From the IMG/VR virus record IMGVR_UViG_3300046616_000314, positions 372,001 to 436,000 of that record: a stretch of DNA of 64,000 nt. One strand, 5' to 3'. The notes beneath the pieces are model-generated. The model was not told the origin of the DNA and searched no databases. It worked only from the letters and a program-made list of their open reading frames with translations. Positions 26,779 to 41,299 of this stretch are shown here, piece after piece (positions within the stretch are counted from its first letter, which is position 1; each line of letters opens with the position of its first letter). The position numbers were made by a program, and so were the translations under genes.

Positions 26779-26794
26779 GTATCTAAGCTATAGT
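26767..26794 (+). promoter_or_regulatory. Early promoter TTGACA-N16-TATAGT
   Basis: Near-consensus match upstream of the 26806 operon. Confidence 0.75.
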
Positions 26795-26805
26795 GATCAT
26801 ATTCT

Positions 26806-27652: not shown

Positions 27653-27828
27653 ATCACTGGTCCGAAATTCGCTATGGTCTGCTGACCCGCGATCAAGAAA
27701 TCGACGGCTTCTTTGTTGTCGGCTATGCTTCCGCGCTCCAAGGTGTGAGCGATGGTAAGCGCGTTCGTGGTCTCAAGGGCGCGCACATGAACTACAACCG
27801 GTACGGAGCGAAACGTGCAAGTTATTAA
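27649..27828 (+). CDS. Hypothetical early protein (59 aa)
   Basis: GGAGG ribosome-binding site, ATGA overlap. Confidence 0.65.
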   Translation: MNHWSEIRYGLLTRDQEIDGFFVVGYASALQGVSDGKRVRGLKGAHMNYNRYGAKRASY

Positions 27829-28120
27829 GACCGGCTATCTCTATTTCCGCCAGCCTCATCGTAGCGATTTCGATCAGCGCGCTTGGACAATCGATATCAA
27901 TCAGGCTGCGCGCTTCGATGACGCTACGGCTGCTGAAATCGTGCGCCACTGGTCGGAAGGTCCCCTGGACAAGAACAAGCAAGGCGAACTGGTTCCCAAG
28001 TATCCCAAATGGAGTATTGCACTCCAAGGTGTAAGCACGAGTGTTTCTAATCCGGTTGTGTTCGAACTGATCGACGTGACCGATGGGCGGGTCTATACGC
28101 TTTTGGAACGGATGCTCTGA
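27815..28120 (+). CDS. Hypothetical early protein
   Basis: GGAG ribosome-binding site, GTG start. Confidence 0.7.
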   Translation: MQVIKTGYLYFRQPHRSDFDQRAWTIDINQAARFDDATAAEIVRHWSEGPLDKNKQGELVPKYPKWSIALQGVSTSVSNPVVFELIDVTDGRVYTLLERML

Positions 28121-28266
28121 TGGAAAAGATTCCTTTCCCGACATTCGAAGAATGGCTGAAGCTGCAACCGGCTGACAAGCAAGGTGACTTGCTTGCGGCT
28201 AAGAATTCGTACTTCACGCAATGGGGCATCGCTGTCCATAAAGCCAAGGGCTATTGGTGGGCGTGA
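28120..28266 (+). CDS. Hypothetical 48-aa protein (MEKIPFPTFEEWLKLQP...)
   Basis: Translated by hand; TGATG coupling. Confidence 0.6.
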   Translation: MEKIPFPTFEEWLKLQPADKQGDLLAAKNSYFTQWGIAVHKAKGYWWA

Positions 28267-28628
28267 CTACTCAAACCATTGGTCATGAAAGTAGTTTGGT
28301 CTATGATCAATCTATGGCGGTTGTTTTTGTTGAGCGCAAAATAGCCAATAAATTTTTCATGGATTACGAGGTTAGTGACGGCACAATTGGTCGATCTGTC
28401 GTTGTAGAACCAACGACTGATATCATTATTCCCCCGCGACATTTTCCTGGCACGTCTCGTTTTCTGGCAATAGTAAAAGATATGCCATACAAGTTGTTCA
28501 TCTTGAACGACGTGGAAATGTATAAGCCGCTCAACAATCATTACCTTCTTCGGGTCGGTGAAGAAGATATGGTTCTTCTGAAGCTTCAAGGCTCAATCGA
28601 AACGGTTGAACTAAACGTCACTATATAA
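28263..28628 (+). CDS. Distant FKLKW-family relative
   Basis: LRVGEEDMVLLKLQG; GTG start overlaps the previous stop. Confidence 0.6.
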   Translation: MTTQTIGHESSLVYDQSMAVVFVERKIANKFFMDYEVSDGTIGRSVVVEPTTDIIIPPRHFPGTSRFLAIVKDMPYKLFILNDVEMYKPLNNHYLLRVGEEDMVLLKLQGSIETVELNVTI

Positions 28629-28632
28629 ATGC

Positions 28633-28660
28633 TTGACAATACTTGTCCCCATGATATGTT
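28633..28660 (+). promoter_or_regulatory. Early promoter TTGACA-N16-TATGTT
   Basis: Upstream of 28673. Confidence 0.65.
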
Positions 28661-28672
28661 GTAAGCATATTC

Positions 28673-29455
28673 ATGGAGATTGGTTCATTGGTCCCTCAAC
28701 ACCTTCATTTCGCCCTGTACGTTCTGGATTGCTATTCCGTTTGGGCTAGCGATACGAAGGCGTGGGCAAAACTCGGCAAGGGTCCGATTGAACTGGAACT
28801 GGCTCACGTTGATGAACTGGTTGCTCTGGGCTTGGGCGAGTATCGCCCGGTCAACGACGAAGGCAATCGCCGCGTCTCGACCATCCGCACGTCGGAACCC
28901 CTGCGCAATGCGTTCGTGGAAACGTTCAGCACCAATCCCGTCCCCACGCATCCTGGCTTCTGGTCCATCGGTGACTGGACGATGGAGACGGTGAAAAACT
29001 ACGAAACGGATACGACCTATCAGGTTCCGTGTCTGATGAGCGAGTATAGCGAGAAGCTGTACGTTCATAGCGGCGGCAATCAATACATGCTGCATTCGAA
29101 GTACAAGAAGGGCGTGCGCGAAACTTCGGGCGCCTACTGTGATGCATTCTTCCTGGCGACGCTGCGTTGCGTGATCTATCACGAAGTGTATTCCGCCGGG
29201 CATTCGTACGTGAAGCGCATCGACGGTCAACGTGGCTATAACTACACGCTGTCGTCGTGGTCGCTGTATGCGATGATTCGGTTTGGTCTGATCGTCGTGA
29301 CCCAAGAATATCAAAAGGACGTTGGTCCTGAAATGTATGGTCCGACCGATCTGGGCGTTGAGTTTTACAAGAAAGCTCTGCCCTATCTGGAACACATGCA
29401 CAATCGCAAGTATTGGGATCAAATCGCTGACAAGATGGATTGGAACGATGAATAA
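28673..29455 (+). CDS. Hypothetical early protein (260 aa)
   Basis: Long ORF with the genome's codon style; may contain two related winged-helix-like halves (weak). Confidence 0.75.
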   Translation: MEIGSLVPQHLHFALYVLDCYSVWASDTKAWAKLGKGPIELELAHVDELVALGLGEYRPVNDEGNRRVSTIRTSEPLRNAFVETFSTNPVPTHPGFWSIGDWTMETVKNYETDTTYQVPCLMSEYSEKLYVHSGGNQYMLHSKYKKGVRETSGAYCDAFFLATLRCVIYHEVYSAGHSYVKRIDGQRGYNYTLSSWSLYAMIRFGLIVVTQEYQKDVGPEMYGPTDLGVEFYKKALPYLEHMHNRKYWDQIADKMDWNDE

Positions 29456-29678
29456 TCTCGAAAAGCGGGTTCCAGTCACGTTCTTGGAAAGCATGATCAA
29501 CATTATCATGTTCGTCGGGATCGTTCCGGGGATGTTGTTCCTGATGATGACGATGATCGTTCAAATCACGCATCTGGGCGTGTACCCCATCTACATCGTG
29601 GTCGGCATGTATTATGTGTCGGTCATGTTCCGCTCGTTGATGCATTACCTGCACTTCGGCTTGACGAGGTTGCCGTAA
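29448..29678 (+). CDS. Small two-TM membrane protein
   Basis: Two hydrophobic stretches; start refined to MNNLEKR. Confidence 0.7.
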   Translation: MNNLEKRVPVTFLESMINIIMFVGIVPGMLFLMMTMIVQITHLGVYPIYIVVGMYYVSVMFRSLMHYLHFGLTRLP

Positions 29679-30079
29679 TGTATTTGTTCGATGATCTTTC
29701 CGACAGCACGCTTTCCAATTGTCGCCACCAAATTGAAATGTGGTGTGACATGCATGGCGTCAACATGCGTCGGCAAATGATCGTGACGAGACAACGAACC
29801 TCCGCGCCGAACTTTCGTTATTTCTTCGATAGCGAAGAGGATTTCATGCTGTTCTGGCTGGTATGGGGTAATCTGTCCAAGCGTAATATCATAGCGTTCA
29901 TTGACGAGAGTCGTCGTCGGTGGCACGGCTGGAATACTGACTTCGACATCATTCATTTCTATGAAGCGTTCTGCCAGATGTCTACGGAAGAGGCTACTAT
30001 TTGGCATCAGCAAGTTCGTGAAGTCGTCGCAGCCAATCAAGACGAATTCAATCGCTTCCATCTGAAGGGATCGGAATAG
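29678..30079 (+). CDS. FKLKW-family relative with C-terminal extension
   Basis: EMWCDMH core; YFFDSEEDFMLFWLVWG. Confidence 0.8.
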   Translation: MYLFDDLSDSTLSNCRHQIEMWCDMHGVNMRRQMIVTRQRTSAPNFRYFFDSEEDFMLFWLVWGNLSKRNIIAFIDESRRRWHGWNTDFDIIHFYEAFCQMSTEEATIWHQQVREVVAANQDEFNRFHLKGSE

Positions 30080-30083
30080 ATTA

Positions 30084-30416
30084 ATGTTTAGTTTCGATCA
30101 TTTCAAACGCGATCTTCGCATCATGCTTTCTTTCCGTCATGCCTTGACCTTCAAGGATGCGGAAGATGAAGCCGACGATTGGCTGAAATGGAGTTACCTC
30201 GTTGATAAGGCTGCGGGCATTAGCATGTTCGTCGTGTCGCCCCATGTCGCCGAATGGTGCAAGGCTCACGATATTTCCGAACCGATCCCGATTGCGTATG
30301 CTTCTCGCACAATGGTAGTCGGCGGAAAGAAGCCCACGTATCGCGAGCGTTATCATTACGCAATTCATTTCAAGAAACCCGAACATCTGGTTCAGTTTCG
30401 GATGAAATGGCTATGA
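30084..30416 (+). CDS. FKLKW-family paralog, cluster 3
   Basis: EWCKAH core; ends IHFKKPEHLVQFRMKWL. Confidence 0.87.
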   Translation: MFSFDHFKRDLRIMLSFRHALTFKDAEDEADDWLKWSYLVDKAAGISMFVVSPHVAEWCKAHDISEPIPIAYASRTMVVGGKKPTYRERYHYAIHFKKPEHLVQFRMKWL

Positions 30417-30733
30417 ATCCTATCGCAATTAAAAGATTCGTTCGGATTATCAAAACCCGTTTTTGGCGTCGATATACTCTGGATTGTTCTTATCAATCGA
30501 ACCACAACGATTCCACGTTGGTCAAACGATGGGACAAAATTATTCGTGTCGTCAAACATCCAAAGGTACTCACCGAACTTTATCTAATAGAAGAGGTTGC
30601 TGCTTGGTGTAAAGAACATCGTATGGCAGAACCTTTTCCCGATCTTGAGTACGACGACGATGACAATTATCTCTACATCATTCGTTTTAAGAAAGCGGCG
30701 GATGTAATTCAGTTTCGGATGAAATGGCTATGA
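30407..30733 (+). CDS. FKLKW-family paralog, cluster 3 (sister of 30084)
   Basis: AWCKEH core; ends IRFKKAADVIQFRMKWL; start refined to MAM. Confidence 0.87.
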   Translation: MAMNPIAIKRFVRIIKTRFWRRYTLDCSYQSNHNDSTLVKRWDKIIRVVKHPKVLTELYLIEEVAAWCKEHRMAEPFPDLEYDDDDNYLYIIRFKKAADVIQFRMKWL

Positions 30734-30948
30734 TTCAAAAACTGGATCATGACAATTATCCTGTCGTGTTGCTTGTCACCGGAGATTGGTTCAGAGCCTA
30801 TAATTCGGGTGCCGCTGGTTGGGAAATGGATGATTGGCTGGACGCCAATGGGATCGATTTCTATTGTGAGTTTGAACGTGGCGTGGGTTATGTCGCCCGA
30901 TTCCGCAATGAAGAAATGGCGATGATGTTCAAGTTGAAATATCTATGA
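30724..30948 (+). CDS. FKLKW-family paralog, cluster 3
   Basis: Ends ARFRNEEMAMMFKLKYL. Confidence 0.87.
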   Translation: MAMIQKLDHDNYPVVLLVTGDWFRAYNSGAAGWEMDDWLDANGIDFYCEFERGVGYVARFRNEEMAMMFKLKYL

Positions 30949-31241
30949 AGTGGGAAAAAGCCAATTATTCAGGGATAGAGACCTTTCGTCTCTTTGTCCC
31001 CAAAGACAGCTTCAACCGGAATTGGAATTTGGGTTGGCGTGGGTCAGGGACCGAATTGTACAAGCACGGAAGACTTCAAGACAAAGACATCTATGATAAA
31101 CGTGTGTTTGGTTCTCCATACTACAACTGGTGTATGTCGGAACTTGGGTATTATCCGCATTGCTGGGGCGATGCTTGGACCTATTCTATTTTTCTAGAAA
31201 CCGAAGAACACGTGGTTCTTTTCCAACTTAAGTGGTGTTGA
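30945..31241 (+). CDS. FKLKW-family paralog, cluster 3
   Basis: NWCMSELGYYP core; ends LETEEHVVLFQLKWC. Confidence 0.87.
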   Translation: MKWEKANYSGIETFRLFVPKDSFNRNWNLGWRGSGTELYKHGRLQDKDIYDKRVFGSPYYNWCMSELGYYPHCWGDAWTYSIFLETEEHVVLFQLKWC

Positions 31242-31242
31242 C

Positions 31243-31467
31243 ATGATGTCTTTGAAAATACCACCTATCGAGGAACGCGGCGCGTTATCGGTTTGGATTC
31301 CGATTGAGCATGAACACTATGTTCTGTTCATGCGAGGAGAAATGGACGCATGGGCGGAAGCAAACGACATTATGTTCTATTGTCGCTTCGAAACTTTCAG
31401 TGAGCAATATATTGTTTGCTTAAAGAATGACGAAGATGCCACACTGTTTAAATTGAAGTGGTGTTGA
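31243..31467 (+). CDS. FKLKW-family paralog, cluster 3
   Basis: Ends LKNDEDATLFKLKWC. Confidence 0.87.
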   Translation: MMSLKIPPIEERGALSVWIPIEHEHYVLFMRGEMDAWAEANDIMFYCRFETFSEQYIVCLKNDEDATLFKLKWC

Positions 31468-31491
31468 CAATCCAAGTATTCATAGTATAGT
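31464..31491 (+). promoter_or_regulatory. Early promoter TTGACA-N16-TATAGT
   Basis: Near-consensus match. Confidence 0.75.
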
Positions 31492-31522
31492 GCTACTATT
31501 CTTTGATTCCTAGGAGCACCGA

Positions 31523-31705
31523 ATGTCCGTTAAGGCTCGCTACGAAATTACCGTTCTGGTCGGTCGCAAGATCGAAGAACGCATCTTCCTGGCTGACTAC
31601 AACGAAGCCATGACGAAGATGGATTCGCTCGAAATCGAATTTCCGAACAAGCAATTCGAATTCACCGATCACAAGCTGTTCGGCGGCAAGTGGAAGGGCG
31701 AATAA
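31523..31705 (+). CDS. Hypothetical early protein
   Basis: AGGAG ribosome-binding site. Confidence 0.75.
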   Translation: MSVKARYEITVLVGRKIEERIFLADYNEAMTKMDSLEIEFPNKQFEFTDHKLFGGKWKGE

Positions 31706-31884
31706 TGATTACCGAAGCTCTGACCCCTGAACAAGCTGCGGCGGCGCAAGCCTGCTATCGCGAACTGATTCGCTTGATGGCGGACATCGGTGAACCGCCG
31801 AAGCTCATTCAGGCACAAGCCTCGTACGGGATGCTTCCCGAGAATAAATCGTGGGCTGAAATCTTCCGCGAAGGTTGTCGCTAA
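31705..31884 (+). CDS. Hypothetical early protein
   Basis: TAATG coupling. Confidence 0.7.
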   Translation: MITEALTPEQAAAAQACYRELIRLMADIGEPPKLIQAQASYGMLPENKSWAEIFREGCR

Positions 31885-31886
31885 CG

Positions 31887-32171
31887 ATGATCCTCCAAAG
31901 CGGAATCATTTTTAATTGGAATATGGATTCTCTTATCCAGGCGTCCATTGCTAATTTTAAAATCCCCGAGAAAGATCGGCGGCGGGGTGAAGGCACTCGC
32001 CTGTACAACGAATGGGAGGCTGCACTTCCTGAGACGGTAGAAATCGTTGAGCTATGGACGCCAGACTACGAAGGGTTGGCATTCTGGAAATCAGTAGGTT
32101 ACACGCCCAAGAATCCAGATATCGAAATTGATGAAGAATTCGGAGTTGTTCTGATTAAGAGACTCCGATGA
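31887..32171 (+). CDS. GNAT-family acetyltransferase
   Basis: IPEKDRRRGEGTRL (acetyl-CoA binding motif A) and AFWKSVGY. Confidence 0.75.
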   Translation: MILQSGIIFNWNMDSLIQASIANFKIPEKDRRRGEGTRLYNEWEAALPETVEIVELWTPDYEGLAFWKSVGYTPKNPDIEIDEEFGVVLIKRLR

Positions 32172-32461
32172 GCCTCATCATAAACCACATGCGGAGTCGT
32201 ATAGAGCTTCAAGGACCGCATACGGGCGAGTACATGCTTGAGGTTCTAGGCGACTACAGAGACAAGATTTATCGCGACCGCGAATGTCTCCGATCCAGGG
32301 TATTCACATGGTGCGTGGATCGCTTGGGCTATGCGCCTACGCTTACTGATCGCAACGAGAACGTTGCGAAGATGCACTTCAAATCCCCAGAAGATATTAT
32401 GGTGTTCCGGCTGAAATGGGGTCTTGGACCTAGCGCGGCGATGGCGGACTATACCGCTTGA
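32168..32461 (+). CDS. FKLKW-family paralog, dispersed
   Basis: TWCVDRLGYAP core; MHFKSPEDIMVFRLKWG. Confidence 0.85.
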   Translation: MSLIINHMRSRIELQGPHTGEYMLEVLGDYRDKIYRDRECLRSRVFTWCVDRLGYAPTLTDRNENVAKMHFKSPEDIMVFRLKWGLGPSAAMADYTA

Positions 32462-32485
32462 CAATACTCAAATCTACTGTAAGAT
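32458..32485 (+). promoter_or_regulatory. Early promoter TTGACA-N16-TAAGAT
   Basis: Upstream of 32515. Confidence 0.7.
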
Positions 32486-32514
32486 ACGAGTATTGATTTT
32501 CGCAGGGGTTTGTC

Positions 32515-32715
32515 ATGATTCTTCGCTCCAAGTCGTTTGAAATGAATGAACCGATTTCTGATGCGTTCATTGAGCGTAGTCATTTCGGTGTCGTCCTGAT
32601 CAACATCAATAGCGATGACCCCGCTGGCAACAAGTACGAATATGTCATCACGGGTGACAGTTCGGAATACGATCAAAATGAAATCGACGTGATCGCGAAG
32701 TTCGTGCTTGGCTAA
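32515..32715 (+). CDS. Hypothetical early protein
   Basis: Downstream of a promoter. Confidence 0.7.
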   Translation: MILRSKSFEMNEPISDAFIERSHFGVVLININSDDPAGNKYEYVITGDSSEYDQNEIDVIAKFVLG

Positions 32716-33053
32716 TGAAACAAATTCTCGGCGCCTTGCGTAATCAAACGCCTAAGTTTTTGCTCTACCGCGTTCTGTTGGAAGAGAGCGATGGCGGCTA
32801 TGCCAACCATAACTTATTTGCCGATCAGCCCTTGCACGAATTTGTGGTGGCTAGTGGAACGCTAGGCAACCATGATCGGCGCGGAACTACTGTTGTGGGC
32901 GAATGGTGCATGACGAATTTCGGCTACATGCCGACTGTTGTCATGCATGGCGGGGATGTTACGAAATCCAGTGATATCGTGCTACGCGAACACGCCATCA
33001 TCTTCAACGAGGAAGACCATGGCGTGTTGTTTCAGTTTAGGTGGAGAGTTTAA
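32715..33053 (+). CDS. FKLKW-family paralog, dispersed
   Basis: EWCMTNFGYMP core; IIFNEEDHGVLFQFRWRV. Confidence 0.8.
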   Translation: MKQILGALRNQTPKFLLYRVLLEESDGGYANHNLFADQPLHEFVVASGTLGNHDRRGTTVVGEWCMTNFGYMPTVVMHGGDVTKSSDIVLREHAIIFNEEDHGVLFQFRWRV

Positions 33054-33238
33054 AAGCGGGTCGTCCGACCACGCATAATAACCCAAAAAACCCAAATGAA
33101 GAACGGTTCAGCCGCAACATCGACGGCATCGATACGGAAGCTATTGTTCCATACGTTCAGCCCATTCTCACGGGCGATGTACCATAGCGGAAACGCCAGC
33201 ACGACAGACAGCAATAAAAAGAAAGTGGTTTTTGACAT
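33050..33238 (-). CDS. Small two-TM membrane protein
   Basis: MSKTTFFLLLSVVLAFPLW...PFFIWVFWVIM; start refined. Confidence 0.65.
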   Translation of the reverse strand: MSKTTFFLLLSVVLAFPLWYIARENGLNVWNNSFRIDAVDVAAEPFFIWVFWVIMRGRTTRF

Positions 33239-33239
33239 C

Positions 33240-33518
33240 TTAGACTCGGTTCTTACCAATGTGGAAGCCATCGCACATGGCGCATTTGTAGGGGCGGAAC
33301 TTCCCGCCATGTTTCTTTTCCATAGACACGGCAGCTTTCTCCGCACTCTTCAGGCTACCATAGGCGACCTTCGGTTTACCAGAGCCTTGCGCAATATGGG
33401 AATTCTTGTGGAACAGTCCCCAGGCATTTCGCGTGATGACGAAATTGCGGAACATCCGACTTAGGGGAAGCTGATACTTCAGAGCAAGAATTATATTTCG
33501 AATTTTCATTTTTGCCAT
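33240..33518 (-). CDS. Basic protein with a C-terminal YKCxxCxGFH Zn ribbon
   Basis: KVAYGS...AEKAA...YKCAMCDGFHIG. Confidence 0.75.
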   Translation of the reverse strand: MAKMKIRNIILALKYQLPLSRMFRNFVITRNAWGLFHKNSHIAQGSGKPKVAYGSLKSAEKAAVSMEKKHGGKFRPYKCAMCDGFHIGKNRV

Positions 33519-33745
33519 TTCAACTTGAAGAGGGCTGCATCATGATTGTTCTGAAATAGCACTTGCCATGTACGATATCCAGCATCATCCAAGAAATGCG
33601 TACACGTGATAGCATGGACATCGTAAATTTCGTTGGCGATACACCAGTCAATGATGTCTTCTTTCGTGCCTTGCTCGCGCAGAATAATGACACTACACGT
33701 GAAGCCAGGATAGTCTAATGGATCAACAACGTCTTCGAAATGCAT
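33506..33745 (-). CDS. FKLKW-family paralog, dispersed
   Basis: DWCIAN core; ends VLFQNNHDAALFKLKWQK. Confidence 0.85.
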   Translation of the reverse strand: MHFEDVVDPLDYPGFTCSVIILREQGTKEDIIDWCIANEIYDVHAITCTHFLDDAGYRTWQVLFQNNHDAALFKLKWQK

Positions 33746-33748
33746 GTG

Positions 33749-34543
33749 TTAGATAAGTCCGTTGGTCGCCACGCTAGAAGCAAGGTTCTTGCTGAAGATC
33801 AACACTTCCTTAGCCGATTTGTCCTTCGACATTCCATACGCCCACTGGGGCTCGACCTGCGGAAATTCGGCGTACATATCTAGGATTTCTTTCCCATTAT
33901 TATATGACATGACCCAGTTGTCGCGATCCTTCACTAGATCGAACAAAGCCGCATGGTCGAACCCCCGGTGTGTATCACCGCGATTGCCGTAGAGATTGTT
34001 CTTGTCTTCGTCCAACAGGTAGGGAGGATCGAGGTACAAGAACGCATCCGGGTTCTGAGCAATCGAGTCGCGGAAGTCCATCAGTTCGACAGTGAAATTG
34101 TCAACCTTGAAGTCCTTCAGATAGTCGATATTAGATACGTTAAATCGTTGACCGGCAGACATGCCGCCCGACATCGTAGAGCCACTGAACGACGAACGAT
34201 TGAGCACATAGAACGTGGCGCCCTTCTCGAAATCATCGGTCATGGTGGGGTTGGTCTTCTGAAGCGTCTTGAAGACATCCTTGGTGATCGGATGGTACTT
34301 CATCACTTCGGTATGCAGAGCCTTGTTATCCTTCAGGAGGGCATTCCAGAAACACACCAAGGGCTCAAACACGTCATAAGCCTTCACTTCCATACCTTGG
34401 GCTGCACACGCCAGTTCAACCGATCCACCGCCCAAAAATGGCGAACACAGTTTCTTAGTGTCGCGCGGGATGTACGAGAGGATGATGTCAACAGCGCGGC
34501 TCTTGCCGCCAGGGTAACGAAGGGGAGACTTGATCTTACGCAC
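33749..34543 (-). CDS. D12-class (Dam-like) DNA N6-adenine methyltransferase
   Basis: LRYPGGKSR, PFLGGGSV, FYVLNRSSFSG, YLDPPY and WVMSYN motifs. Confidence 0.93.
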   Translation of the reverse strand: MRKIKSPLRYPGGKSRAVDIILSYIPRDTKKLCSPFLGGGSVELACAAQGMEVKAYDVFEPLVCFWNALLKDNKALHTEVMKYHPITKDVFKTLQKTNPTMTDDFEKGATFYVLNRSSFSGSTMSGGMSAGQRFNVSNIDYLKDFKVDNFTVELMDFRDSIAQNPDAFLYLDPPYLLDEDKNNLYGNRGDTHRGFDHAALFDLVKDRDNWVMSYNNGKEILDMYAEFPQVEPQWAYGMSKDKSAKEVLIFSKNLASSVATNGLI

Positions 34544-35411
34544 TAGGAAGAATATCTTTCAAAATAAATTCAGGGTATTCAACAAAAATAATATTCGACT
34601 TCAGTTGGGGGCTCGATTTCATTCTTGTGTCACCGTTCTTCACGCGGACCTGTAAATGACAGGCGTGTCCCGTGTTGGTGAGCAATTTGAAATTGAACTT
34701 GTTGGCTTGCGTCTTGCCCCGCATCGGCAGGGTTTCGATGTCAACCACGTCAACGAAATTGAGTTTGTCTAAGACCGTATAATCCTCAACATAGCAACCC
34801 TTTTTCGAAATTGCGAATTTAAAATAGGGTTCGCTACCAAAAATAAATTTGCCTAGGGTGTTAGCTAACTTGGCGCGATCTTCGCTCTCGTTGATCAGAT
34901 TTACCGAAGAACTAACCCACTCGTCATAAGCATTGTACTTGCCGCCCCAAGATGAGAATCGACGTTCATCCGTGGGGAACTGATCATAAAGGCTGCGGAT
35001 ACTCGCGCCTTGATCGGGGTTGACACCATAAACTTTGGTGAAGTCGTAATTGCGATGGGTTCGATTACTTTTCAGTTCGGGATTGTTGTGCTTGCACGAG
35101 ATACCGAACCACTTGTCACCTTCGGCAACGATGTCGCGGGGATCACCCTTTGCGCCAGCCATGTCGCTATTGAAGGCGAAGAATTCTGGTAGGGGTCGCC
35201 CTTCCGAACGCTTCACGTAATCCACAACATAGTTCAGAGCAATCTCATCCATATGATTGTAGAGGGTCGGTGCATCTAAACGTAATTCGCCGTGTGCGCT
35301 TTGATTAGCGAAATACGAGGGATTTTGCGTGAATGAAATTCCAGTGACGCTCGTTAGATGATGAGCAACAAGAAATTCGAATGCTTTGCCGTTACGGACT
35401 TGTGTAGCCAT
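34536..35411 (-). CDS. HaeIII-family type II restriction endonuclease (PD-(D/E)xK)
   Basis: NGKAFE, NPSY, NSDxAGxKGDPRDI and WFGISCKHNN...KSNR match the recalled HaeIII family pattern (GRAFE...QSD...GDVRD...IGxSxKxNH...KHSR); start refined to MATQVRNG. Confidence 0.75.
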   Translation of the reverse strand: MATQVRNGKAFEFLVAHHLTSVTGISFTQNPSYFANQSAHGELRLDAPTLYNHMDEIALNYVVDYVKRSEGRPLPEFFAFNSDMAGAKGDPRDIVAEGDKWFGISCKHNNPELKSNRTHRNYDFTKVYGVNPDQGASIRSLYDQFPTDERRFSSWGGKYNAYDEWVSSSVNLINESEDRAKLANTLGKFIFGSEPYFKFAISKKGCYVEDYTVLDKLNFVDVVDIETLPMRGKTQANKFNFKLLTNTGHACHLQVRVKNGDTRMKSSPQLKSNIIFVEYPEFILKDILPSA

Positions 35412-35432
35412 GGTGAATGTTAAAAACAAAAT

Positions 35433-35457
35433 GGGGATCACCAACTAAGTGATCCCC
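35433..35457 (-). terminator. Intrinsic terminator GGGGATCAC-N7-GTGATCCCC followed by a T-rich tract
   Basis: 9-bp stem then ATTTTGTTTTT on the minus strand, 21 nt before the endonuclease ATG. Confidence 0.75.
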
Positions 35458-35527
35458 AGATTTGTTCCGGTTCCTTAATTTGTTAACCATGTATAACAAA
35501 GGCTAGGAACCATATGCATTATTAAAA

Positions 35528-35851
35528 TTACAGTGACTCGTAATTTTCTTTCAGCCACTCGATAACAGCATTGAAATCATTCGAAGAATCGCTAAGTTCA
35601 GCGAGCTTTAAAACCTCTTCTTCCGACTTGATTTTGCATCGTTTCATGGCGTCTTTGCTCATCACCAAAGGTGAGCCTGCCCACGTATAACCGTGAAGGT
35701 CGCTTTGAACCCAGGCTTCCTTGTCTAGGAAATCGAGCAACACTCCAAGAGCGCAGAAATGGTCATCGTGGTCGCGCAAACCACACTTACCATGTTTGTA
35801 TTCACCGGATTCAAGACGTTCGATCCACTTAAGGGCGGTTCCGCGATTCAT
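35528..35851 (-). CDS. Conserved-type phage hypothetical protein (WxxxLxSGxY...CxLGV)
   Basis: WIERLESGEYKHG...FCALGVLLD. Confidence 0.75.
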   Translation of the reverse strand: MNRGTALKWIERLESGEYKHGKCGLRDHDDHFCALGVLLDFLDKEAWVQSDLHGYTWAGSPLVMSKDAMKRCKIKSEEEVLKLAELSDSSNDFNAVIEWLKENYESL

Positions 35852-36702
35852 GCTGCTAGATCGTCCGACTTCGAAACCAGCGGGGGAGCCTTGGGCTTAC
35901 GACCACGGGTAGACTTGGCGCCTTCCGGTAGACGATACTCAAGTTCGTTCTCGACCTGTCGGGTGTACGACGGGGTTGCGCCAGCCATGATGAGAAGGTC
36001 ATCGCGGATGTTCTGGTTCTTCTTTTCGAGGTTCAGAATGCGGGTGAAGCAATTCTTGATGACGGTGGTATAGAAAGCGAACGGGTTGTCCGACTTGCTC
36101 TCGTCAAACTGAAGACCGATTTGCGCAAGCTGAAGGTGGGCTTGGCTACGCATTTCGTCTACATACGTATAACCGCGCCAGTTGCCGCGACGCGAGTAGC
36201 GTTCGACCAGCAACATCATCATCATGGCAAGGCGATTGTTGATCTTGCCGTTGTCGGTGCAGAAGTGACCGTTTTCAATGCCGCCCTTCCAATGCGAACG
36301 CAGCACTTCCTTCAGACCGTCTTCAGTCATGATGTAGTGCTTGAAGGGTGGGAAACCTGCCTTGACGTAAAGCTTGTCGCCAACGACCTTGCTCTTACGT
36401 GATTTAATAGGGTCTTCTGGAATGTGTTCGTAAGTCATAACCCGGAACACGAGGCTTTCGGTGGTGATGGTGTTAATGTCGATTGAGGGTTTGCCACGAG
36501 GCGATGCCTTCTTAGCCTTTACCTTGTCAATCAGTTCTTGTGTGATCTCACTCTTGTCTAAAACAATGATGTCATGGTTGGAATGCGCTTCATCAACGAA
36601 AGAACAAAATGACTTCTTGCTTTCGTGAATAGCTGCTAACAACTCTTTGTTATTGATATACTTGATTTTTGCACTTTGTGCAACTGCTGGGGTAATGCTC
36701 AT
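35848..36702 (-). CDS. gp55: Late-transcription sigma factor (T4 gp55-like)
   Basis: YINNKELLAAI, RGYTYVDEM, FDESKSDNPFAFYT and ILNLEKK motifs. Confidence 0.9.
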   Translation of the reverse strand: MSITPAVAQSAKIKYINNKELLAAIHESKKSFCSFVDEAHSNHDIIVLDKSEITQELIDKVKAKKASPRGKPSIDINTITTESLVFRVMTYEHIPEDPIKSRKSKVVGDKLYVKAGFPPFKHYIMTEDGLKEVLRSHWKGGIENGHFCTDNGKINNRLAMMMMLLVERYSRRGNWRGYTYVDEMRSQAHLQLAQIGLQFDESKSDNPFAFYTTVIKNCFTRILNLEKKNQNIRDDLLIMAGATPSYTRQVENELEYRLPEGAKSTRGRKPKAPPLVSKSDDLAA

Positions 36703-36871
36703 ATAGTTAATATATCCTATCTTAATTCTAATACGCAATTTTTATTATTCAAAAACACTTGAAATAGTGAAATTAATACAGTAACATGGAAGAATCTGGT
36801 CTCCACTAGCGATTTAGATTGCCTATTTCGTCTCAGATCGTGTATGGTTAACTCCTACTTTAATGCATTCA

Positions 36872-36877
36872 TAAATA
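36872..36877 (+). promoter_or_regulatory. Late promoter TAAATA
   Basis: At the head of the plus-strand baseplate operon. Confidence 0.6.
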
Positions 36878-36882
36878 TGAGT

Positions 36883-37404
36883 ATGGCTATGCGCGTTATT
36901 TTTACCTATGTGCGAATGAATCCAGTGACGGTTGGACACGACCGTTTGGTGGGTGAGATCGTGCGACAAGCGAAGGCAAGTGGATCGTCTGCTTATCTTT
37001 ACCTGTCGCAATCACATGATGCTGACCGCAATCCATTGAACCCGGAATACAAGCTTGGAGTGATCCAAAAGCGGTATCCAGGCGTCACGGTTAAACTTGC
37101 TAAGAACGTATTCGAGGCAGGACAAGACATGGCGTCTGAGGGTTTTAAGGAAGCTGTCATGGTGGTCGGAGCCGACCGCTATGAGTCATTTGGTCAGTCG
37201 CTTTCTAAGTACGTAGGGACGGAAGTCCTGCCCTTGGAAAAGATTGATGTCGAATTCATTACACGTGGCGAAGAAGAAGCAAGTGCAACTAAAGCACGTC
37301 TCGCCGCGCTGAATGGTGACATTGAAGGTTTCGCTGCACTCGTTGGGTCTAACGAAGTGCATGAACTGTATGAAGCTGTTCGGGAGGGTATGGGAGCAAA
37401 GTAA
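36883..37404 (+). CDS. HIGH-superfamily nucleotidyltransferase (phage cytidyltransferase-like)
   Basis: RMNPVTVGH, SHDADRNPL, VVGADR and SATKAR motifs. Confidence 0.82.
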   Translation: MAMRVIFTYVRMNPVTVGHDRLVGEIVRQAKASGSSAYLYLSQSHDADRNPLNPEYKLGVIQKRYPGVTVKLAKNVFEAGQDMASEGFKEAVMVVGADRYESFGQSLSKYVGTEVLPLEKIDVEFITRGEEEASATKARLAALNGDIEGFAALVGSNEVHELYEAVREGMGAK

Positions 37405-37407
37405 TAT

Positions 37408-38562
37408 ATGGCTGGCAATGTAACACCGATTACGACAAGTGGTGTTGAAGTTATTACAGGCGTTCAAGTTGGTGATGTTGATACAACACCTTCAAAAGTC
37501 GCGCTGGCAGTTTCGTCCTATAACTTGAAAGACGCTGATGGCAAGACTGCATTTGTCAATAGCGTTCAAGCAAAAGAAACCCCTGGCTTCAACAAAGCAT
37601 TCAATGATGCTTTGGGTATCAAAAAGAATACAAGCGTAGCGTATACGTCGGTTGAATTAACTTCGGCAACGATTGCCACTCCCGCCAATCTCCAAGGCAT
37701 TACTGCACCAAAGGCGGGTGGTGATTTCATGGCGGCTGGCGACATGCGTCAGCGCATCACGGGCATCACCGTTGCGCAGCCCGGTTCAGATTTTGTTGCG
37801 GCAGGTAGCCTTAATCCTACGATGGATTTGCAAGGTATCAGCGGGACACAACCCGGATCGGATTTCGTAGCCGCTGGATCATTTGCCCAACCTAATTTCA
37901 CCGCGTATTCCAACACGTCTAACGACATCCGCGTTCGCCTATGTGCCCAGGTGGGTCAAGAGTCGCGCGTCTATGGTGACGACACACCTGACAATCTGAT
38001 GTCGATCATGCATCCGAAGGCGCATGGCACGAATGGTCTGTTGTTCCCGTACACGCCGACGATCAGCGTTACCCAGGCTGTTGACTACAAGGAAGCTGGT
38101 CCTCTGGTTCACACCAATGCCGACATCCAAGCCTATAGCCGTACACCGAGCGTGACCTTCAGTGTCACAGGCAAGTTCACCATTCAGAACCAACGCGAGG
38201 GACGCTATGCGCTCGCGGTTCTGCATTTCCTCCGTACCGTTTCGAAGATGTATTTCGGTGAACAAGACAAGGCAAATGGTCTGGCAGGCTTGCCGCCGCC
38301 CGTGTTGGTGTTCAACGCTTACGGCAATTATATGTTTAACAATCTCCCGGTCATCCTGAAGTCGCATAGCTACACATTGAACGACACGGTTGACATGGTT
38401 GACGTGCAAACAGCCGGTGGCATTGCCCGCATTCCGGCATTGTTTGAAATCAGCATGGATTTGGCTGTTCAACAATCGCCATCGAAACTCCGCAAAGAAT
38501 TCAGCCTTGATGCTTTCCGCACTGGTGATCTGATGCGCAATAACAAGTCAGGGTGGATTTAA
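37408..38562 (+). CDS. Baseplate tail-tube initiator/cap-like protein with N-terminal repeats
   Basis: LFPYTPTI...HFLRTVSKMYFG...GLPPPVLVFNAYG; position at the head of the baseplate module. Confidence 0.7.
   Translation: MAGNVTPITTSGVEVITGVQVGDVDTTPSKVALAVSSYNLKDADGKTAFVNSVQAKETPGFNKAFNDALGIKKNTSVAYTSVELTSATIATPANLQGITAPKAGGDFMAAGDMRQRITGITVAQPGSDFVAAGSLNPTMDLQGISGTQPGSDFVAAGSFAQPNFTAYSNTSNDIRVRLCAQVGQESRVYGDDTPDNLMSIMHPKAHGTNGLLFPYTPTISVTQAVDYKEAGPLVHTNADIQAYSRTPSVTFSVTGKFTIQNQREGRYALAVLHFLRTVSKMYFGEQDKANGLAGLPPPVLVFNAYGNYMFNNLPVILKSHSYTLNDTVDMVDVQTAGGIARIPALFEISMDLAVQQSPSKLRKEFSLDAFRTGDLMRNNKSGWI
37696..37890 (+). repeat. Three GI-x4-G-[SG]-DF-[VM]-AAG repeats
   Basis: GITAPKAGGDFMAAG, GITVAQPGSDFVAAG, GISGTQPGSDFVAAG. 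Confidence 0.75.
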
Positions 38563-38867
38563 TGAGCAAGTATACTTACGCGGCGTCTTCGCCCTACGCA
38601 ACTACATCCCAAACCAATTGGTACATCGGTTACTATGCTCCGCGCGCGATCCCGCCTGCTGCGGACGACAAACCGTTCACGGTTCTGCCTAAGCACGACA
38701 CCAAGCCGACTGTTTTGAGCAATGATCTTTACGGTACGCCCGCTCTTTGGTGGGTGTTCGCCGTTCGCAATCGTAACCTGATAAAAGACCCGGTTTGGGA
38801 CTTGAAAGAAGGTTTGGAAATTATTGTCCCCTCATTGGCGACACTCAAGAAAGCACTTGGCATATGA
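38562..38867 (+). CDS. gp53: Baseplate wedge LysM-like protein (T4 gp53-like)
   Basis: SSPYA...KPTVLSNDLYGTPALWWVFAVRN...DPVWD...GLEIIVP. Confidence 0.8.
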   Translation: MSKYTYAASSPYATTSQTNWYIGYYAPRAIPPAADDKPFTVLPKHDTKPTVLSNDLYGTPALWWVFAVRNRNLIKDPVWDLKEGLEIIVPSLATLKKALGI

Positions 38868-41299
38868 CGATTAAAGACGATCAAGAGAAACAAACGTTAC
38901 TCCGTCCCTACGTCCCCCAATCGAATAGCGCGGCTCTGACACATAACTGGAATACGCTCTCAAGCTTTGAGGAACCAACACCCTTGAAGCAATCTGAGAC
39001 GCATCGGTATGAAGCCTTGGTTAGTAAAGACCAATTGGCTGTCTTAGATGCAAAGGCAGTTGTTCCACAAACGCAATCAACTTATGTAACTCAAGCGGAT
39101 GCCGTTGTTGAGAATACATCGGATATGCTTCGCGCTGAATTGGAAACCGAAGAAGGTTTCATTGAAAACATTCTTAGCCGTTATCCGAGCTATGCTTACA
39201 AGTTCCGTTTGTTTATGACAAACGAGATCGATATTGCTTTGAGAGCAAAGACCGGCACTGAAGCTAATCTGTATAATGCTCTAGATGAATTGAACCAATA
39301 CACGTTGGCTGAAAGCGGCGTGACGGCTGGCTTTAATATCAAGAGCGTTGAAATGAATACGGCGGCTGGTCCGAACTTCCGAACCCGCAATTCGTATCTT
39401 ACTGAAATCAAGATGGAAGTGAATGAGCCGAAGGGTTCAAGCTTCACGGAAGTCTTGAGCAATGCGGCAGAGCGTTTGAGAATTTCGAATTATCGCTTGT
39501 TCTGGTACTATCTGGAACTTACATTCATTTCGTATAATGATGACGGTTCGATCAACGAATCTCCATTGGAAGATTTGAACCTTCCTAATGGTGGTCGTTG
39601 GATTTGGCAGATTGACATCAATAAGTTGGATGCTCGCGTTGACGAAAGCGGGTCCAACTATACGCTATCCTGTCGTCCACATAGCATGACCGCATTCAAT
39701 GACAACTTCCTAGGTACACCAGACAACTTGACGGTTGAGGGTAGCACTATTGGTGATCTGTTCGCCGACATGAGCAAGAAACTGACCCAGGCTTATACTC
39801 GCCGCTACGCTGGTGAAATTTATAAGTTTAAGATTGTCAATCGGGGTATCGAAGGCAAAGACATCGATATGAACACCTTCAAGGTTCAGCCTGACAAGGA
39901 TGTCGATAACATTCGTGCTTTGTCGATGGTTGCCAATAAGAAGAATATTCCTTCGGCATCTATTCCCAAGGGAACAACGGTTTCTGACTTCATTGATTTC
40001 GCATTCATCCACTCGGAAGATGCACAAAAAATCATGCTGGATACGTCTTCGCCGGTTAACTTGGAAGACTCGGACGGCACGTTCAATGGCAAGGGTTATC
40101 GAGCTTCGGTCATCTTCCGAATTGAAACCGATGTTGTGGTTACAGGTTTCGACCCGATTACCAACACCTACATGAAGGAAATCACCTACAACGTTTGGGG
40201 CTACAAGACTAAGGCTGCGTTGTTGAGCCGTTCACAGGGCGACAACATTATCAAGTCGCCGAAGGTTGCTGTTGATATGGTCAAAGCCATTAAAGCAGAC
40301 GGTGGAATGAAAAAGAAATATGACTTCATGTACACTGGCATGAACACCGAAGTCTTGCGTTTCGATTTCAATTACAACATGGCATTCAGTGTCGTCTTGG
40401 GTAACATCGCCGGTTGGCGCCAAGGCTACGATCAAGTTGCGGTTCACGCCAAGGTCGCGCCCAATGGAACCAACATCAAGGCTGGTGGCAGTCAATCGGG
40501 TGAAGTCAACGAATTGACGGTTGACCAAGTAGCCAAGCAAATTGATGATTTGAAACGAGATCGCGCCACGGCAGAAGCTAATTCGCAATTGACGGATGCA
40601 CAACGCCAAACCGTCTTTGCACAAATTGATGCGCGGTCACGTCGTCTTCAAACTCGCGCCGATCTACTTCGTAAAAATTATAACGATGCGAAGGTTTCGC
40701 AATTAGAAGCCGACATTCGCGATGGTTCAACAAACGCTTATAGCGAAGACACATTCGGGGAAGACTACGTTCCTACCTATGACTCTACGCTGAAGATTTC
40801 TTATCAGTCTCAGACCGATGAATCTACCAACGCTCAAGGAACGGGTTTCTTGGGTCACTGGCATCGCGGCGAGAGCTTGACGGGTTCGTTGTTCAACCAA
40901 TTGTATCAGCCGATGAACAACGCAATGTTCAAGATCAGCATTGATATTCGCGGCGATCCTTATTGGTTGGGAGCTTCGAACTTGGATCGTCGTGCATTGT
41001 TGAATGGGCTGACCTTGAAGCAATCGCAACATGCTGATCTCAAGGCTTTGCCGACTTTCGTTCAACATGACACGGCGTTTGCTTTGAACTTCCGCTTCCC
41101 CGCTCGTATCGATCCCGAAACTCAAATCCCAGAAATCCGCAAGGACGATTCGTTTAACGGTGTTTACGTTGTGACGATGATCAAAAGCGTATTCTCGGAT
41201 GGGGCTTTCACACAAACACTAGACGCTTACAAACTTCCTTTGGTCAACATGGTTGGTCAGAGCAATCCTAAGACGACAGACGCCGGTACAATTCAATGA
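38864..41299 (+). CDS. Large baseplate hub protein (gp27-like)
   Basis: Lies between gp53 and gp5; IDIRGDPYWL and GVYVVTMIKSVFSDGAFTQTL hub-type C-terminus. Confidence 0.7.
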   Translation: MTIKDDQEKQTLLRPYVPQSNSAALTHNWNTLSSFEEPTPLKQSETHRYEALVSKDQLAVLDAKAVVPQTQSTYVTQADAVVENTSDMLRAELETEEGFIENILSRYPSYAYKFRLFMTNEIDIALRAKTGTEANLYNALDELNQYTLAESGVTAGFNIKSVEMNTAAGPNFRTRNSYLTEIKMEVNEPKGSSFTEVLSNAAERLRISNYRLFWYYLELTFISYNDDGSINESPLEDLNLPNGGRWIWQIDINKLDARVDESGSNYTLSCRPHSMTAFNDNFLGTPDNLTVEGSTIGDLFADMSKKLTQAYTRRYAGEIYKFKIVNRGIEGKDIDMNTFKVQPDKDVDNIRALSMVANKKNIPSASIPKGTTVSDFIDFAFIHSEDAQKIMLDTSSPVNLEDSDGTFNGKGYRASVIFRIETDVVVTGFDPITNTYMKEITYNVWGYKTKAALLSRSQGDNIIKSPKVAVDMVKAIKADGGMKKKYDFMYTGMNTEVLRFDFNYNMAFSVVLGNIAGWRQGYDQVAVHAKVAPNGTNIKAGGSQSGEVNELTVDQVAKQIDDLKRDRATAEANSQLTDAQRQTVFAQIDARSRRLQTRADLLRKNYNDAKVSQLEADIRDGSTNAYSEDTFGEDYVPTYDSTLKISYQSQTDESTNAQGTGFLGHWHRGESLTGSLFNQLYQPMNNAMFKISIDIRGDPYWLGASNLDRRALLNGLTLKQSQHADLKALPTFVQHDTAFALNFRFPARIDPETQIPEIRKDDSFNGVYVVTMIKSVFSDGAFTQTLDAYKLPLVNMVGQSNPKTTDAGTIQ

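What the first reader, a model, noticed from the sequence alone, without database searches (positions are those of the whole stretch)
34536..35411. Phage-encoded HaeIII-family endonuclease with near-total absence of GGCC from the genome
Seen: the ORF has the HaeIII-family motif order. In a manual scan of all 64 kb I found only one GGCC (10942-10945), against about 160-250 expected at 45-50% GC, while GCGC, CCGG and GATC are common. I also saw no Trp-Pro dipeptide (which forces GGCC) in the long proteins. Established: HaeIII cuts GGCC and is normally paired with an m5C methyltransferase. Inference: the phage may degrade host or competitor DNA at GGCC and protect itself by site avoidance rather than methylation. 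The alternative is avoidance of a host GGCC restriction system.
Basis: partly seen in the sequence, partly recalled or inferred. Interest (0 to 1): 0.85.

Follow-up and report, generated by a model that had tools for sequence, protein, structure and literature searches.

The report
Giant-phage GGCC restriction-modification gene pair
A giant phage carries a HaeIII-type restriction enzyme together with a matching methylase that databases mislabel as adenine-specific, and its DNA lacks GGCC and about twenty other restriction sites, most likely to evade host defences rather than to survive its own enzyme.

Summary
GGCC occurs once in 64 kb (about 199 expected). It is also absent from 9.7 kb beyond the window. 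Trp-Pro is absent (19 expected). ORF 34536-35411(-) is an intact, divergent HaeIII-family nuclease.

The gene overlapping it downstream (33749-34543, -) scores as a "D12 adenine" methylase. Its closest solved relative by far is M.CbeI, the N4-cytosine GGCC methylase that partners CbeI, a HaeIII isoschizomer. The phage therefore encodes a complete CbeI-type GGCC restriction-modification pair, not a methylase-less nuclease.

The same nuclease-then-methylase module sits in five other phage-like contigs. Homologues of the methylase lie next to canonical HaeIII-family nucleases in 25 of 80 cellular loci.

GGCC loss does not need the nuclease. Viral contigs with the methylase alone are equally depleted (median observed/expected 0.17, against 0.59 for random viral contigs). 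The window also lacks 20 other 6-bp palindromes completely, a purge its closest relatives largely share although they keep GGCC.

Most likely the GGCC loss is anti-restriction site avoidance. The methylase covers residual sites, and the nuclease acts on unmodified foreign DNA. This is a new member of a known kind and of moderate interest.

The parts
34536..35411 (-). Divergent HaeIII-family (PD-(D/E)XK-like) restriction endonuclease, 291 aa. Predicted specificity is GGCC.
   Evidence: Pfam RE_HaeIII 33.4 bits, above the cutoff of 25. PADLOC REase_II. An exhaustive HMMER search found 53 relatives, the nearest at 31% identity. In a 37-sequence alignment it keeps the family's invariant or near-invariant residues: G8, E12, D83, G89-D90, D93, G103, S105-x-K107, K114, R117, R256, L270-K271. 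The AlphaFold model has pLDDT 91.9.
33749..34543 (-). Alpha-class (D12-domain) DNA methyltransferase of the M.CbeI / DmtB / M.Ssp6803II clade, 264 aa. Predicted product is GG(m4C)C. The GTG start overlaps the nuclease stop by 8 nt.
   Evidence: Pfam MethyltransfD12 101.7 bits. It falls below the cutoff of the Dam model TIGR00571 (84 against 115). The best solved relative is 7M6B = M.CbeI (120 bits, E 1e-33), against DpnM at 31 bits and E. coli Dam at 22 bits. The FxGxG and DPPY motifs are present. The overlap is seen in the sequence.
35432..35458 (-). Terminator-like GC-rich hairpin plus T-run, ending 21 nt upstream of the nuclease ATG. No Shine-Dalgarno sequence lies between them.
   Evidence: Any function is inferred.
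10942..10945 (.). The only GGCC in the window. It is probably a forced Trp-Pro (TGG CCC) in the small hydrophobic ORF 10881-11027(+).
   Evidence: The reading frame is ambiguous.
1..64000 (.). Window-wide purge of GGCC, 20 other 6-bp palindromes and 10 asymmetric 6-mers.
   Evidence: The purge continues for 9.7 kb beyond the window.

Best explanation
The two overlapping genes form a complete Type II restriction-modification module of the CbeI type. It pairs a HaeIII-family nuclease that cuts unmodified GGCC with a D12-fold methylase that makes GG(m4C)C. The module sits on a 561-kb phage related to the Atu_ph07/PBECO4/GAP32 group of jumbo myoviruses. The near-absence of GGCC is one item in a very broad restriction-site purge that lets incoming, unprotected phage DNA escape host restriction enzymes. 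The methylase covers the few GGCC sites that cannot be removed and any sites in replicating DNA. The nuclease can then attack unmodified GGCC-bearing DNA, either rival phages or hosts that do not methylate GGCC, at almost no risk to the phage. Shown: family memberships, gene arrangement, conservation of the module, and the k-mer statistics. Inferred: GGCC specificity of both enzymes, enzymatic activity, the target of the nuclease, and the selective cause of the purge.
For: (1) The nuclease is an intact HaeIII-family member with the conserved core residues.
(2) The methylase is far closer to M.CbeI than to any GATC Dam. M.CbeI, DmtB and M.Ssp6803II are D12-annotated enzymes proven to methylate GGCC at N4 (PMC3425538; PMC6105098; PMC8616854).
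(3) In 25 of 80 cellular loci found with this methylase, a canonical HaeIII-family ORF (104-352 bits; two of them broken into two pieces) lies directly downstream.
(4) The nuclease-then-methylase module, with a 4-8 nt overlap or a 6-12 nt gap, recurs in five other phage-like contigs: L090, L004, L173, L174, L375. Nuclease identity among the three aligned is only 25-31%, while the methylases are about 60% identical to the window's.
(5) Viral loci carrying this methylase are strongly GGCC-depleted compared with random viral loci (median observed/expected 0.17 against 0.59, p = 5e-6). This independently ties the clade to GGCC.
(6) Methylase-only loci are as depleted as nuclease-plus-methylase loci (p = 1.0), so the nuclease is not needed for the depletion.
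(7) 20 further hexamer palindromes and 10 asymmetric hexamers are absent. The closest relatives (48-56% baseplate wedge identity) share 11-17 of the 20 palindromes yet have normal GGCC (0.58-1.05). Other relatives lack GTAC, AGCT, CGCG or ACGT instead.
Against: No enzyme was assayed. The nuclease matches the Pfam model only over its N-terminal half and is about 20% identical to canonical members, so its specificity could have drifted. If the hosts restrict GGCC they also methylate it, which would shield host DNA from the phage nuclease and leaves its target unclear. All six carriers of the phage-type module are GGCC-poor (0.005-0.31), while 79 sigma-factor relatives without it lie at 0.41-1.22. 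Some contribution from self-restriction therefore cannot be excluded. Methylase-only status rests on 10-kb flanks, not whole genomes. A terminator-like hairpin and the lack of a ribosome-binding site just upstream suggest low expression.
Confidence: 0.6

Rival explanations
1. The phage's own GGCC nuclease is the selective agent. The genome protects itself by having no sites rather than by methylation, and uses the enzyme to shred host or competitor DNA.
For: All six genomes with the phage-type module have the lowest GGCC ratios (0.005-0.31), against 0.41-1.22 in 79 related loci without it (p = 1e-4). GGCC is the most depleted palindromic tetramer in five of the six. The purge reaches the protein level, with no Trp-Pro.
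Against: A cognate-type methylase is translationally coupled to the nuclease. The other five carriers keep 2-4 GGCC sites per 3-21 kb, so they must rely on methylation. Methylase-only viral loci are equally depleted, 13 of 39 at 0.05 or below. 13% of random viral loci are also at 0.05 or below. A 340-kb viral contig with a canonical methylase-then-nuclease pair is barely depleted (0.73).
Confidence: 0.15
2. The pair recognises a different, adenine-containing site such as GATC, as the D12 annotation suggests. The GGCC purge is then an unrelated coincidence.
For: Pfam and NCBIfam label the methylase as adenine-specific. It has DPPY, the usual N6-adenine motif. The nuclease's C-terminal half does not match the Pfam HaeIII model. 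GATC and TGATCA are plentiful while RGATCY and CGATCG are absent, a pattern resembling Dam-methylated DNA.
Against: The proven GGCC m4C enzymes M.CbeI, DmtB and M.Ssp6803II carry the same annotation and, for M.CbeI, the DPPY motif. Similarity to M.CbeI is 120 bits, against 22-31 bits for GATC methylases. The score is below the Dam model cutoff. Homologues pair with canonical HaeIII-family nucleases. Carriers are specifically GGCC-depleted and not GATC-depleted. The nuclease aligns with the family end to end, including the C-terminal R..KN..LK block.
Confidence: 0.1
3. Only the methylase matters, as an anti-restriction device. The nuclease is a decaying or repurposed passenger with no GGCC-cutting role.
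For: Most viral carriers have the methylase alone (79 of 80 loci). The nuclease evolves much faster (25-31% identity among the three aligned phage nucleases) than the methylase (about 60%). A terminator-like hairpin and no ribosome-binding site lie upstream.
Against: The ORF is intact in all six phage contigs despite deep divergence, with the putative catalytic residues invariant. Restriction enzymes typically evolve faster than their methylases (general knowledge). Overlapping stop and start codons are conserved.
Confidence: 0.1

Closest known systems
CbeI / M.CbeI of Caldicellulosiruptor bescii (Chung et al. 2012, PMC3425538; structure 7M6B)
   Same: A HaeIII-like nuclease is paired with a D12-annotated, DPPY-containing alpha-class methylase that makes m4C in GGCC. 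The window methylase's best solved relative is M.CbeI (E 1e-33).
   Different: The module sits on a 561-kb phage, not a bacterial chromosome. The gene order is nuclease then methylase with overlapping codons, whereas the 25 cellular homologous loci I examined have methylase then nuclease. The nuclease belongs to a very divergent phage subfamily. I could not obtain the CbeI nuclease sequence for a direct comparison.
HaeIII / M.HaeIII (and NgoPII, MthTI) GGCC systems
   Same: Same nuclease family (Pfam PF09556) and the same expected recognition site.
   Different: Those systems use an m5C methylase (PF00145). Here the adjacent methylase has the D12 fold. The window's only m5C methylase (16146-17072) lies 17 kb away, and its catalytic domain resembles M.HhaI, not M.HaeIII.
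Solitary GGCC m4C methylases DmtB (Anabaena) and M.Ssp6803II (Synechocystis)
   Same: Same methylase clade. Like most viral homologues found here, they occur without a nuclease.
   Different: Those are chromosomal enzymes with regulatory roles. Here the enzyme is phage-borne and coupled to a nuclease.
Virus-encoded restriction-modification systems (chlorella viruses such as PBCV-1; phage P1) - from general knowledge
   Same: A virus carries both a site-specific nuclease and its methylase. The proposed uses are host-DNA degradation or exclusion of rivals.
   Different: Those viruses keep and methylate their sites. This phage has also deleted nearly all of them.
Restriction-site avoidance in phages (T7; GGCC-free Bacillus phages facing BsuRI) - from general knowledge
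   Same: Near-total loss of short palindromes, extending to codon and amino-acid choice.
   Different: The scale is unusual: GGCC plus 20 hexamer palindromes plus 10 asymmetric hexamers in a genome of more than 500 kb. It is combined with carriage of the cognate restriction-modification pair.

Membership tests
HaeIII restriction endonuclease family (Pfam PF09556) | Score above the Pfam gathering threshold | tested here: met
   33.4 bits against a cutoff of 25, E 3.6e-8, but only model positions 1-161 of 298.
HaeIII restriction endonuclease family (Pfam PF09556) | Full-length homology and conservation of the family's invariant core (GD.RD ... G.S.K ... K..R; C-terminal R..N...LK) | tested here: met
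   The 37-sequence alignment keeps D93 and G192 invariant. G8, E12, D83, D90, S105, K107, K114, R117, R256 and K271 are conserved in at least 90% of sequences and present in the window protein. A sister phage protein matches the family profile at 99.9% probability over 263 columns.
HaeIII restriction endonuclease family (Pfam PF09556) | Cleavage of GG^CC | not testable with these tools
   Requires an enzyme assay. There is no solved structure of a relative: Foldseek against the PDB gave no hit with E below 0.3.
M.CbeI / DmtB / M.Ssp6803II clade of alpha-class N4-cytosine GGCC methylases | Closer to proven clade members than to GATC Dam-type enzymes | tested here: met
   M.CbeI (7M6B) 120 bits, against DpnM 31 bits and E. 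coli Dam 22 bits. Below the cutoff of the Dam model TIGR00571.
M.CbeI / DmtB / M.Ssp6803II clade of alpha-class N4-cytosine GGCC methylases | AdoMet motif FxGxG and catalytic DPPY | tested here: met
   SPFLGGGS and YLDPPYLL are present.
M.CbeI / DmtB / M.Ssp6803II clade of alpha-class N4-cytosine GGCC methylases | Genomic partnership with GGCC nucleases, or a link to GGCC | tested here: met
   25 of 80 cellular homologous loci have an adjacent HaeIII-family ORF. Viral carriers are GGCC-depleted compared with random viral loci, p = 5e-6.
M.CbeI / DmtB / M.Ssp6803II clade of alpha-class N4-cytosine GGCC methylases | Makes m4C in GGCC | not testable with these tools
   Needs a protection assay or SMRT/bisulfite data.
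Type II restriction-modification operon | Nuclease and methylase adjacent, on the same strand, with the pairing conserved | tested here: met
   8-nt overlap in the window. The same pairing occurs in five other phage-like contigs.
Classical HaeIII-type system (nuclease plus m5C methylase) | Adjacent C5-cytosine methylase (PF00145) | tested here: not met
   The adjacent methylase is PF02086. The only PF00145 gene in the window is 17 kb away and has an M.HhaI-like catalytic domain.
Dam (GATC) methylase | Reaches the curated score of the Dam equivalog or subfamily models | tested here: not met
   TIGR00571 84.1 against a cutoff of 114.85. NF008152 24 against a cutoff of 441.

The most novel reading that the evidence does not exclude
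The phage tells self from non-self by sequence composition. Having erased GGCC from more than half a megabase, it can deploy a GGCC nuclease freely against host or co-infecting DNA. The methylase is kept only to cover a handful of unavoidable sites. This divergent nuclease-then-methylase module would then be a specialised offensive weapon of huge phages. More broadly, this megaphage clade shows a shared, near-complete purge of about 20 hexamer restriction sites, an unusually extensive anti-restriction genome design.
Probability: 0.2. Interest if true: 0.65.

Novelty: new member of a known kind. Interest (0 to 1): 0.4.

Why it matters
The result corrects a tempting misreading. The 'Dam-like' gene beside the nuclease is almost certainly its GGCC-specific m4C partner, and this clade is routinely mis-annotated as adenine-specific. 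It shows that huge phages carry complete CbeI-type restriction-modification modules, in a distinct phage subfamily with reversed gene order. It also provides a data-based test showing that GGCC loss in phages goes with the GGCC methylase, and so with hosts that restrict GGCC, rather than with the phage's own nuclease. The accompanying purge of about 30 other sites, shared across 400-600 kb relatives, is a useful marker of the restriction landscape these uncultivated megaphages face and may help in guessing their hosts.

Tried and rejected
- Megablast of the locus and of 24 kb of structural genes against GenBank phages found no match.
- tblastn of the nuclease against GenBank phages found no match.
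- The word-indexed protein search with the nuclease found only the protein itself.
- phmmer of the nuclease against PDB sequences found nothing.
- A high-confidence AlphaFold model (pLDDT 91.9) searched by Foldseek against the PDB gave no significant hit, so no fold-based clue to specificity.
- IMG/VR and metagenome scans with the three-sequence nuclease alignment returned only the window's own contig, the contig already known to carry P0123, and one partial hit, L089, which was not examined further.
- Cluster look-up of canonical family members gave no informative names.
- Three attempts to sample distant parts of the 561-kb contig failed. A search with the small paralogue family found only the window. 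An exact-product look-up of the baseplate protein was not on record.
- I first took the methylase for a Dam-type enzyme, which would imply an adenine-containing site. I rejected this after the M.CbeI match.
- I considered whether the m5C methylase at 16146-17072 could be the HaeIII-type partner. I rejected this because its catalytic domain resembles M.HhaI, its target-recognition region is unmatched, and it lies 17 kb away.

Full report

Yes. GGCC occurs once in the 64,000 bases (position 10942). Expected are 199 from a second-order Markov model or 210 from base composition. Every other tetramer has an observed/expected ratio of at least 0.73.

In 105 crudely called ORFs the loss is seen in all three codon phases: GGC|Cnn 1 against 86 expected, nGG|CCn 0 against 33, nnG|GCC 0 against 80. 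GGC is simply not used for glycine before a C, and GCC is not used for alanine after a G.

Selection has reached the protein level. Trp-Pro, which forces TGGCCN, occurs 0 times against 19.4 expected. Arg-Pro stays at expectation by using CGT, CGC, CGA and AGA.

The single GGCC lies in a 48-aa hydrophobic ORF with an AGGAG ribosome-binding site (10881-11027 +), where it encodes Trp-Pro. An overlapping TTG ORF would read it as Gly-Pro, so the frame is probable but not certain.

The window is positions 372,001-436,000 of IMG/VR contig 3300046616_000314, which is 561,116 bp long. The next 9.7 kb of that contig also has no GGCC, against 34.5 expected. I could not read the rest of the contig.

**2. 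What is the ORF?**

ORF 34536-35411(-) is intact (291 aa). It passes the Pfam RE_HaeIII threshold, but only over its N-terminal half. An exhaustive HMMER search of 1.8 billion representative proteins found 53 relatives, the nearest at 31% identity.

Aligned with 36 of them, it keeps the family's conserved positions end to end. These are G8-K9, E12, D83, G89-D90-x-R-D93, G103-I-S105-C-K107, K114, R117, and the C-terminal R256-x-K-N and L270-K271. It is therefore a highly divergent but probably functional family member.

It forms a subfamily with P0122, P0123, P0153, P0168 and the L375 ORF. This subfamily has R-V/Y-K-N-G-D/N-T where canonical members have F-R-I-H-N-A-S-S.

A confident AlphaFold model (pLDDT 91.9) has no detectable relative in the PDB. 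Structure therefore says nothing about specificity.

**3. The neighbouring gene changes the picture.**

The gene directly downstream (33749-34543, -) starts at a GTG that overlaps the nuclease stop codon by 8 nt. Pfam calls it a D12 N6-adenine methylase. Taken at face value, that would imply a site containing adenine.

Its best solved relative, however, is 7M6B at 120 bits (E 1e-33). DpnM scores 31 bits and E. coli Dam 22 bits. It also falls below the curated cutoff of the Dam model.

7M6B is M.CbeI of Caldicellulosiruptor bescii (PMC8616854). Chung et al. showed three things about M.CbeI (PMC3425538):
- It is annotated as a D12 adenine methylase and carries DPPY, yet it makes N4-methylcytosine in GGCC.
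- It protects DNA from CbeI, an isoschizomer of HaeIII encoded next to it.
- It is 57% identical to DmtB of Anabaena, another GGCC m4C enzyme.

M.Ssp6803II of Synechocystis is a third proven member of this D12-domain GGCC clade (PMC6105098).

**4. Independent support for the pairing.**

A scan of 185,579 species genomes with an alignment of the methylase's homologues returned 80 loci. In 25 of them a canonical HaeIII-family ORF lies immediately downstream on the same strand. These score 104-352 bits against my family profile, and two are broken into two pieces.

In phage-like contigs the reverse order recurs five more times, with a 4-nt overlap or a 6-12 nt gap:
- L090/L001, next to the same late-sigma and virion-gene block as in the window.
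- L004.
- L173 and L174.
- L375, a 440-kb contig.

The three aligned phage nucleases are only 25-31% identical to one another, while the methylases are about 60% identical to the window's. The module is therefore old and both genes have been maintained. The locus is a complete CbeI-type GGCC restriction-modification module, not a nuclease without a methylase.

**5. Does GGCC loss track the nuclease?**

At first sight it does. The six carriers have observed/expected ratios of 0.005, 0.11, 0.31, 0.17, 0.23 and 0.14. Seventy-nine loci from relatives found through the adjacent sigma-factor gene have no such module nearby and range from 0.41 to 1.22.

The decisive control is phages that have the methylase but not the nuclease. 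Of 80 IMG/VR loci found with the methylase alignment, only one has a HaeIII-family ORF within 10 kb (L295). That one is canonical, in methylase-then-nuclease order, and is barely depleted (0.73).

The 39 methylase-only loci with at least 8 GGCC expected have a median ratio of 0.17. Thirteen are at 0.05 or below, for example 1 against 67 and 0 against 37. They are indistinguishable from the carriers of both genes (p = 1.0) and far below 77 random viral loci (median 0.59, p = 5e-6).

GGCC depletion therefore goes with the GGCC methylase, and so with a lifestyle that faces GGCC restriction. It does not go with the nuclease. Near-total GGCC loss is also not rare among phages: 10 of 77 random loci are at 0.05 or below.

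**6. GGCC is one of many purged sites.**

Twenty other 6-bp palindromes, each expected 12-17 times, are completely absent: ACATGT, ACGCGT, ACTAGT, AGATCT, AGCGCT, AGTACT, CAGCTG, CCCGGG, CCGCGG, CGATCG (Markov expectation 36), CTCGAG, CTGCAG, GACGTC, GAGCTC, GCATGC, GCCGGC, GGATCC, GTCGAC, GTGCAC and TCCGGA.

Ten asymmetric hexamers are absent too. They include AGATCC, CACTGC, CAGCTC, CTCCAG and AAGGAG. From memory, these match BstYI, BtsI, AceIII, BpmI and CstMI sites.

The distribution is bimodal. Other palindromes are at or above expectation, for example TTCGAA 57 and GAATTC 46. The 20 palindromes are also absent from the extra 9.7 kb, where 42.6 occurrences in total would be expected.

The closest relatives by baseplate-wedge protein (48-56% identity, contigs of 190-610 kb) share 11-17 of these 20 absences. 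They nevertheless have normal GGCC (0.58-1.05) and often lack CTAG, TGCA or GTAC instead. More distant relatives lack AGCT, CGCG or ACGT.

The hexamer purge is therefore a clade-wide habit, and tetramer purges are lineage-specific. This is the signature of site avoidance driven by the restriction enzymes of whatever hosts each lineage meets. The phage cannot plausibly encode 30 nucleases of its own.

**7. Most likely mechanism.**

Incoming DNA is protected by having no sites. The methylase covers the residual forced sites, about one per 64-74 kb, which extrapolates to roughly 8 in the genome. The nuclease is then free to cut unmodified GGCC in other DNA.

Which DNA it cuts is unresolved. If the usual host restricts GGCC, its chromosome is methylated and largely immune. 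Rival phages, or hosts without GGCC methylation, are then the more likely targets.

A strong terminator-like hairpin ends 21 nt upstream of the nuclease ATG and there is no Shine-Dalgarno sequence. This suggests low, read-through expression, which fits a toxic gene.

A contribution of self-restriction to the completeness of the purge cannot be excluded. It is not required by the data.

**8. Novelty.**

Already known: GGCC systems of the CbeI type, orphan GGCC m4C methylases, virus-borne restriction-modification systems, and restriction-site avoidance.

New here:
- A divergent, phage-specific nuclease subfamily in reversed gene order on 400-560 kb phages.
- The quantitative link between this mis-annotated methylase clade and GGCC loss in viral contigs.
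- The extent of the shared hexamer purge in this megaphage clade.

I rate it a new member of a known kind, of moderate interest.

Noticed in passing
window 1-64000; L377 (9.7 kb beyond the window); relatives L378, L379, L393, L408, L411 and others: Twenty 6-bp palindromes besides those containing GGCC, and 10 asymmetric hexamers (including AAGGAG, CACTGC, CAGCTC and CTCCAG), are completely absent, while other palindromes are at or above expectation. The closest megaphage relatives (contigs of 190-610 kb) share 11-17 of the 20 absences, so this looks like a clade-wide restriction-site purge.
   Followed up: partly
L013, L018, L023, L034, L040, L061, L062, L065; L379, L408, L411: Related huge-phage contigs each lack a different 4-bp palindrome almost entirely: GTAC, AGCT, CGCG, ACGT, CTAG or TGCA. 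I did not test whether each carries a matching methylase or nuclease.
   Followed up: no
window 16146-17072 (-): A second DNA methylase: a C5-cytosine methylase (PF00145, E 5e-90). Its catalytic domain closely matches M.HhaI (231 bits over residues 7-179), but its target-recognition region matches nothing solved. Specificity is unknown. GCGC is not depleted in the window.
   Followed up: partly
window 9721-11993 (-), 13975-14480 (-), 17171-18773 (+), 33506-33745 (-): A large family of small paralogous ORFs (about 75-150 aa) ends in ...(E/D)(E/D)xAxxFK(L/M)KW(Q/L/F). They are often arranged head-to-tail with overlapping stop and start codons (repeated 14-mer TGAAATGGCTATGA). There is no Pfam hit for the one tested. 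One member sits just downstream of the methylase.
   Followed up: partly
window-wide GATC-containing sites: GATC (388) and TGATCA (28) are plentiful, but AGATCT, GGATCC, AGATCC/GGATCT and CGATCG are all zero. From memory, this is the pattern expected if GATC is adenine-methylated, which blocks MboI and BclI but not BamHI, BglII, BstYI or PvuI. No GATC-type Dam was identified in the window.
   Followed up: no
L090 13096-14952 (also L091 9948-11606): The related phage that carries the P0122 nuclease has a second restriction-modification-like pair 2 kb downstream: another D12-domain methylase followed by an EcoRI-family (PF02963) nuclease. GAATTC and CAATTG are not depleted there.
   Followed up: partly
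L375 7425-9051: In the 440-kb contig an N6_N4 methylase (PF01555) and an HNH protein lie next to the nuclease-methylase module, forming a small cluster of DNA-modification genes.
   Followed up: no
L149, L160, L161, L163, L165, L144, L172 (cellular loci): Several bacterial genome loci (Campylobacter-related, Chitinophagaceae, WOR-3, Dolichospermum) carry a homologue of this methylase without a HaeIII-family neighbour. They have almost no GGCC in 5-11 kb, for example 0 against 37 expected. They may pair with an unrelated GGCC nuclease, or may be prophage DNA.
   Followed up: no
window 35432-35458: An 11-bp-stem GC-rich hairpin followed by TTTTGTTTTT separates the late-sigma-factor operon from the nuclease gene. 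The nuclease has no recognisable ribosome-binding site.
   Followed up: partly
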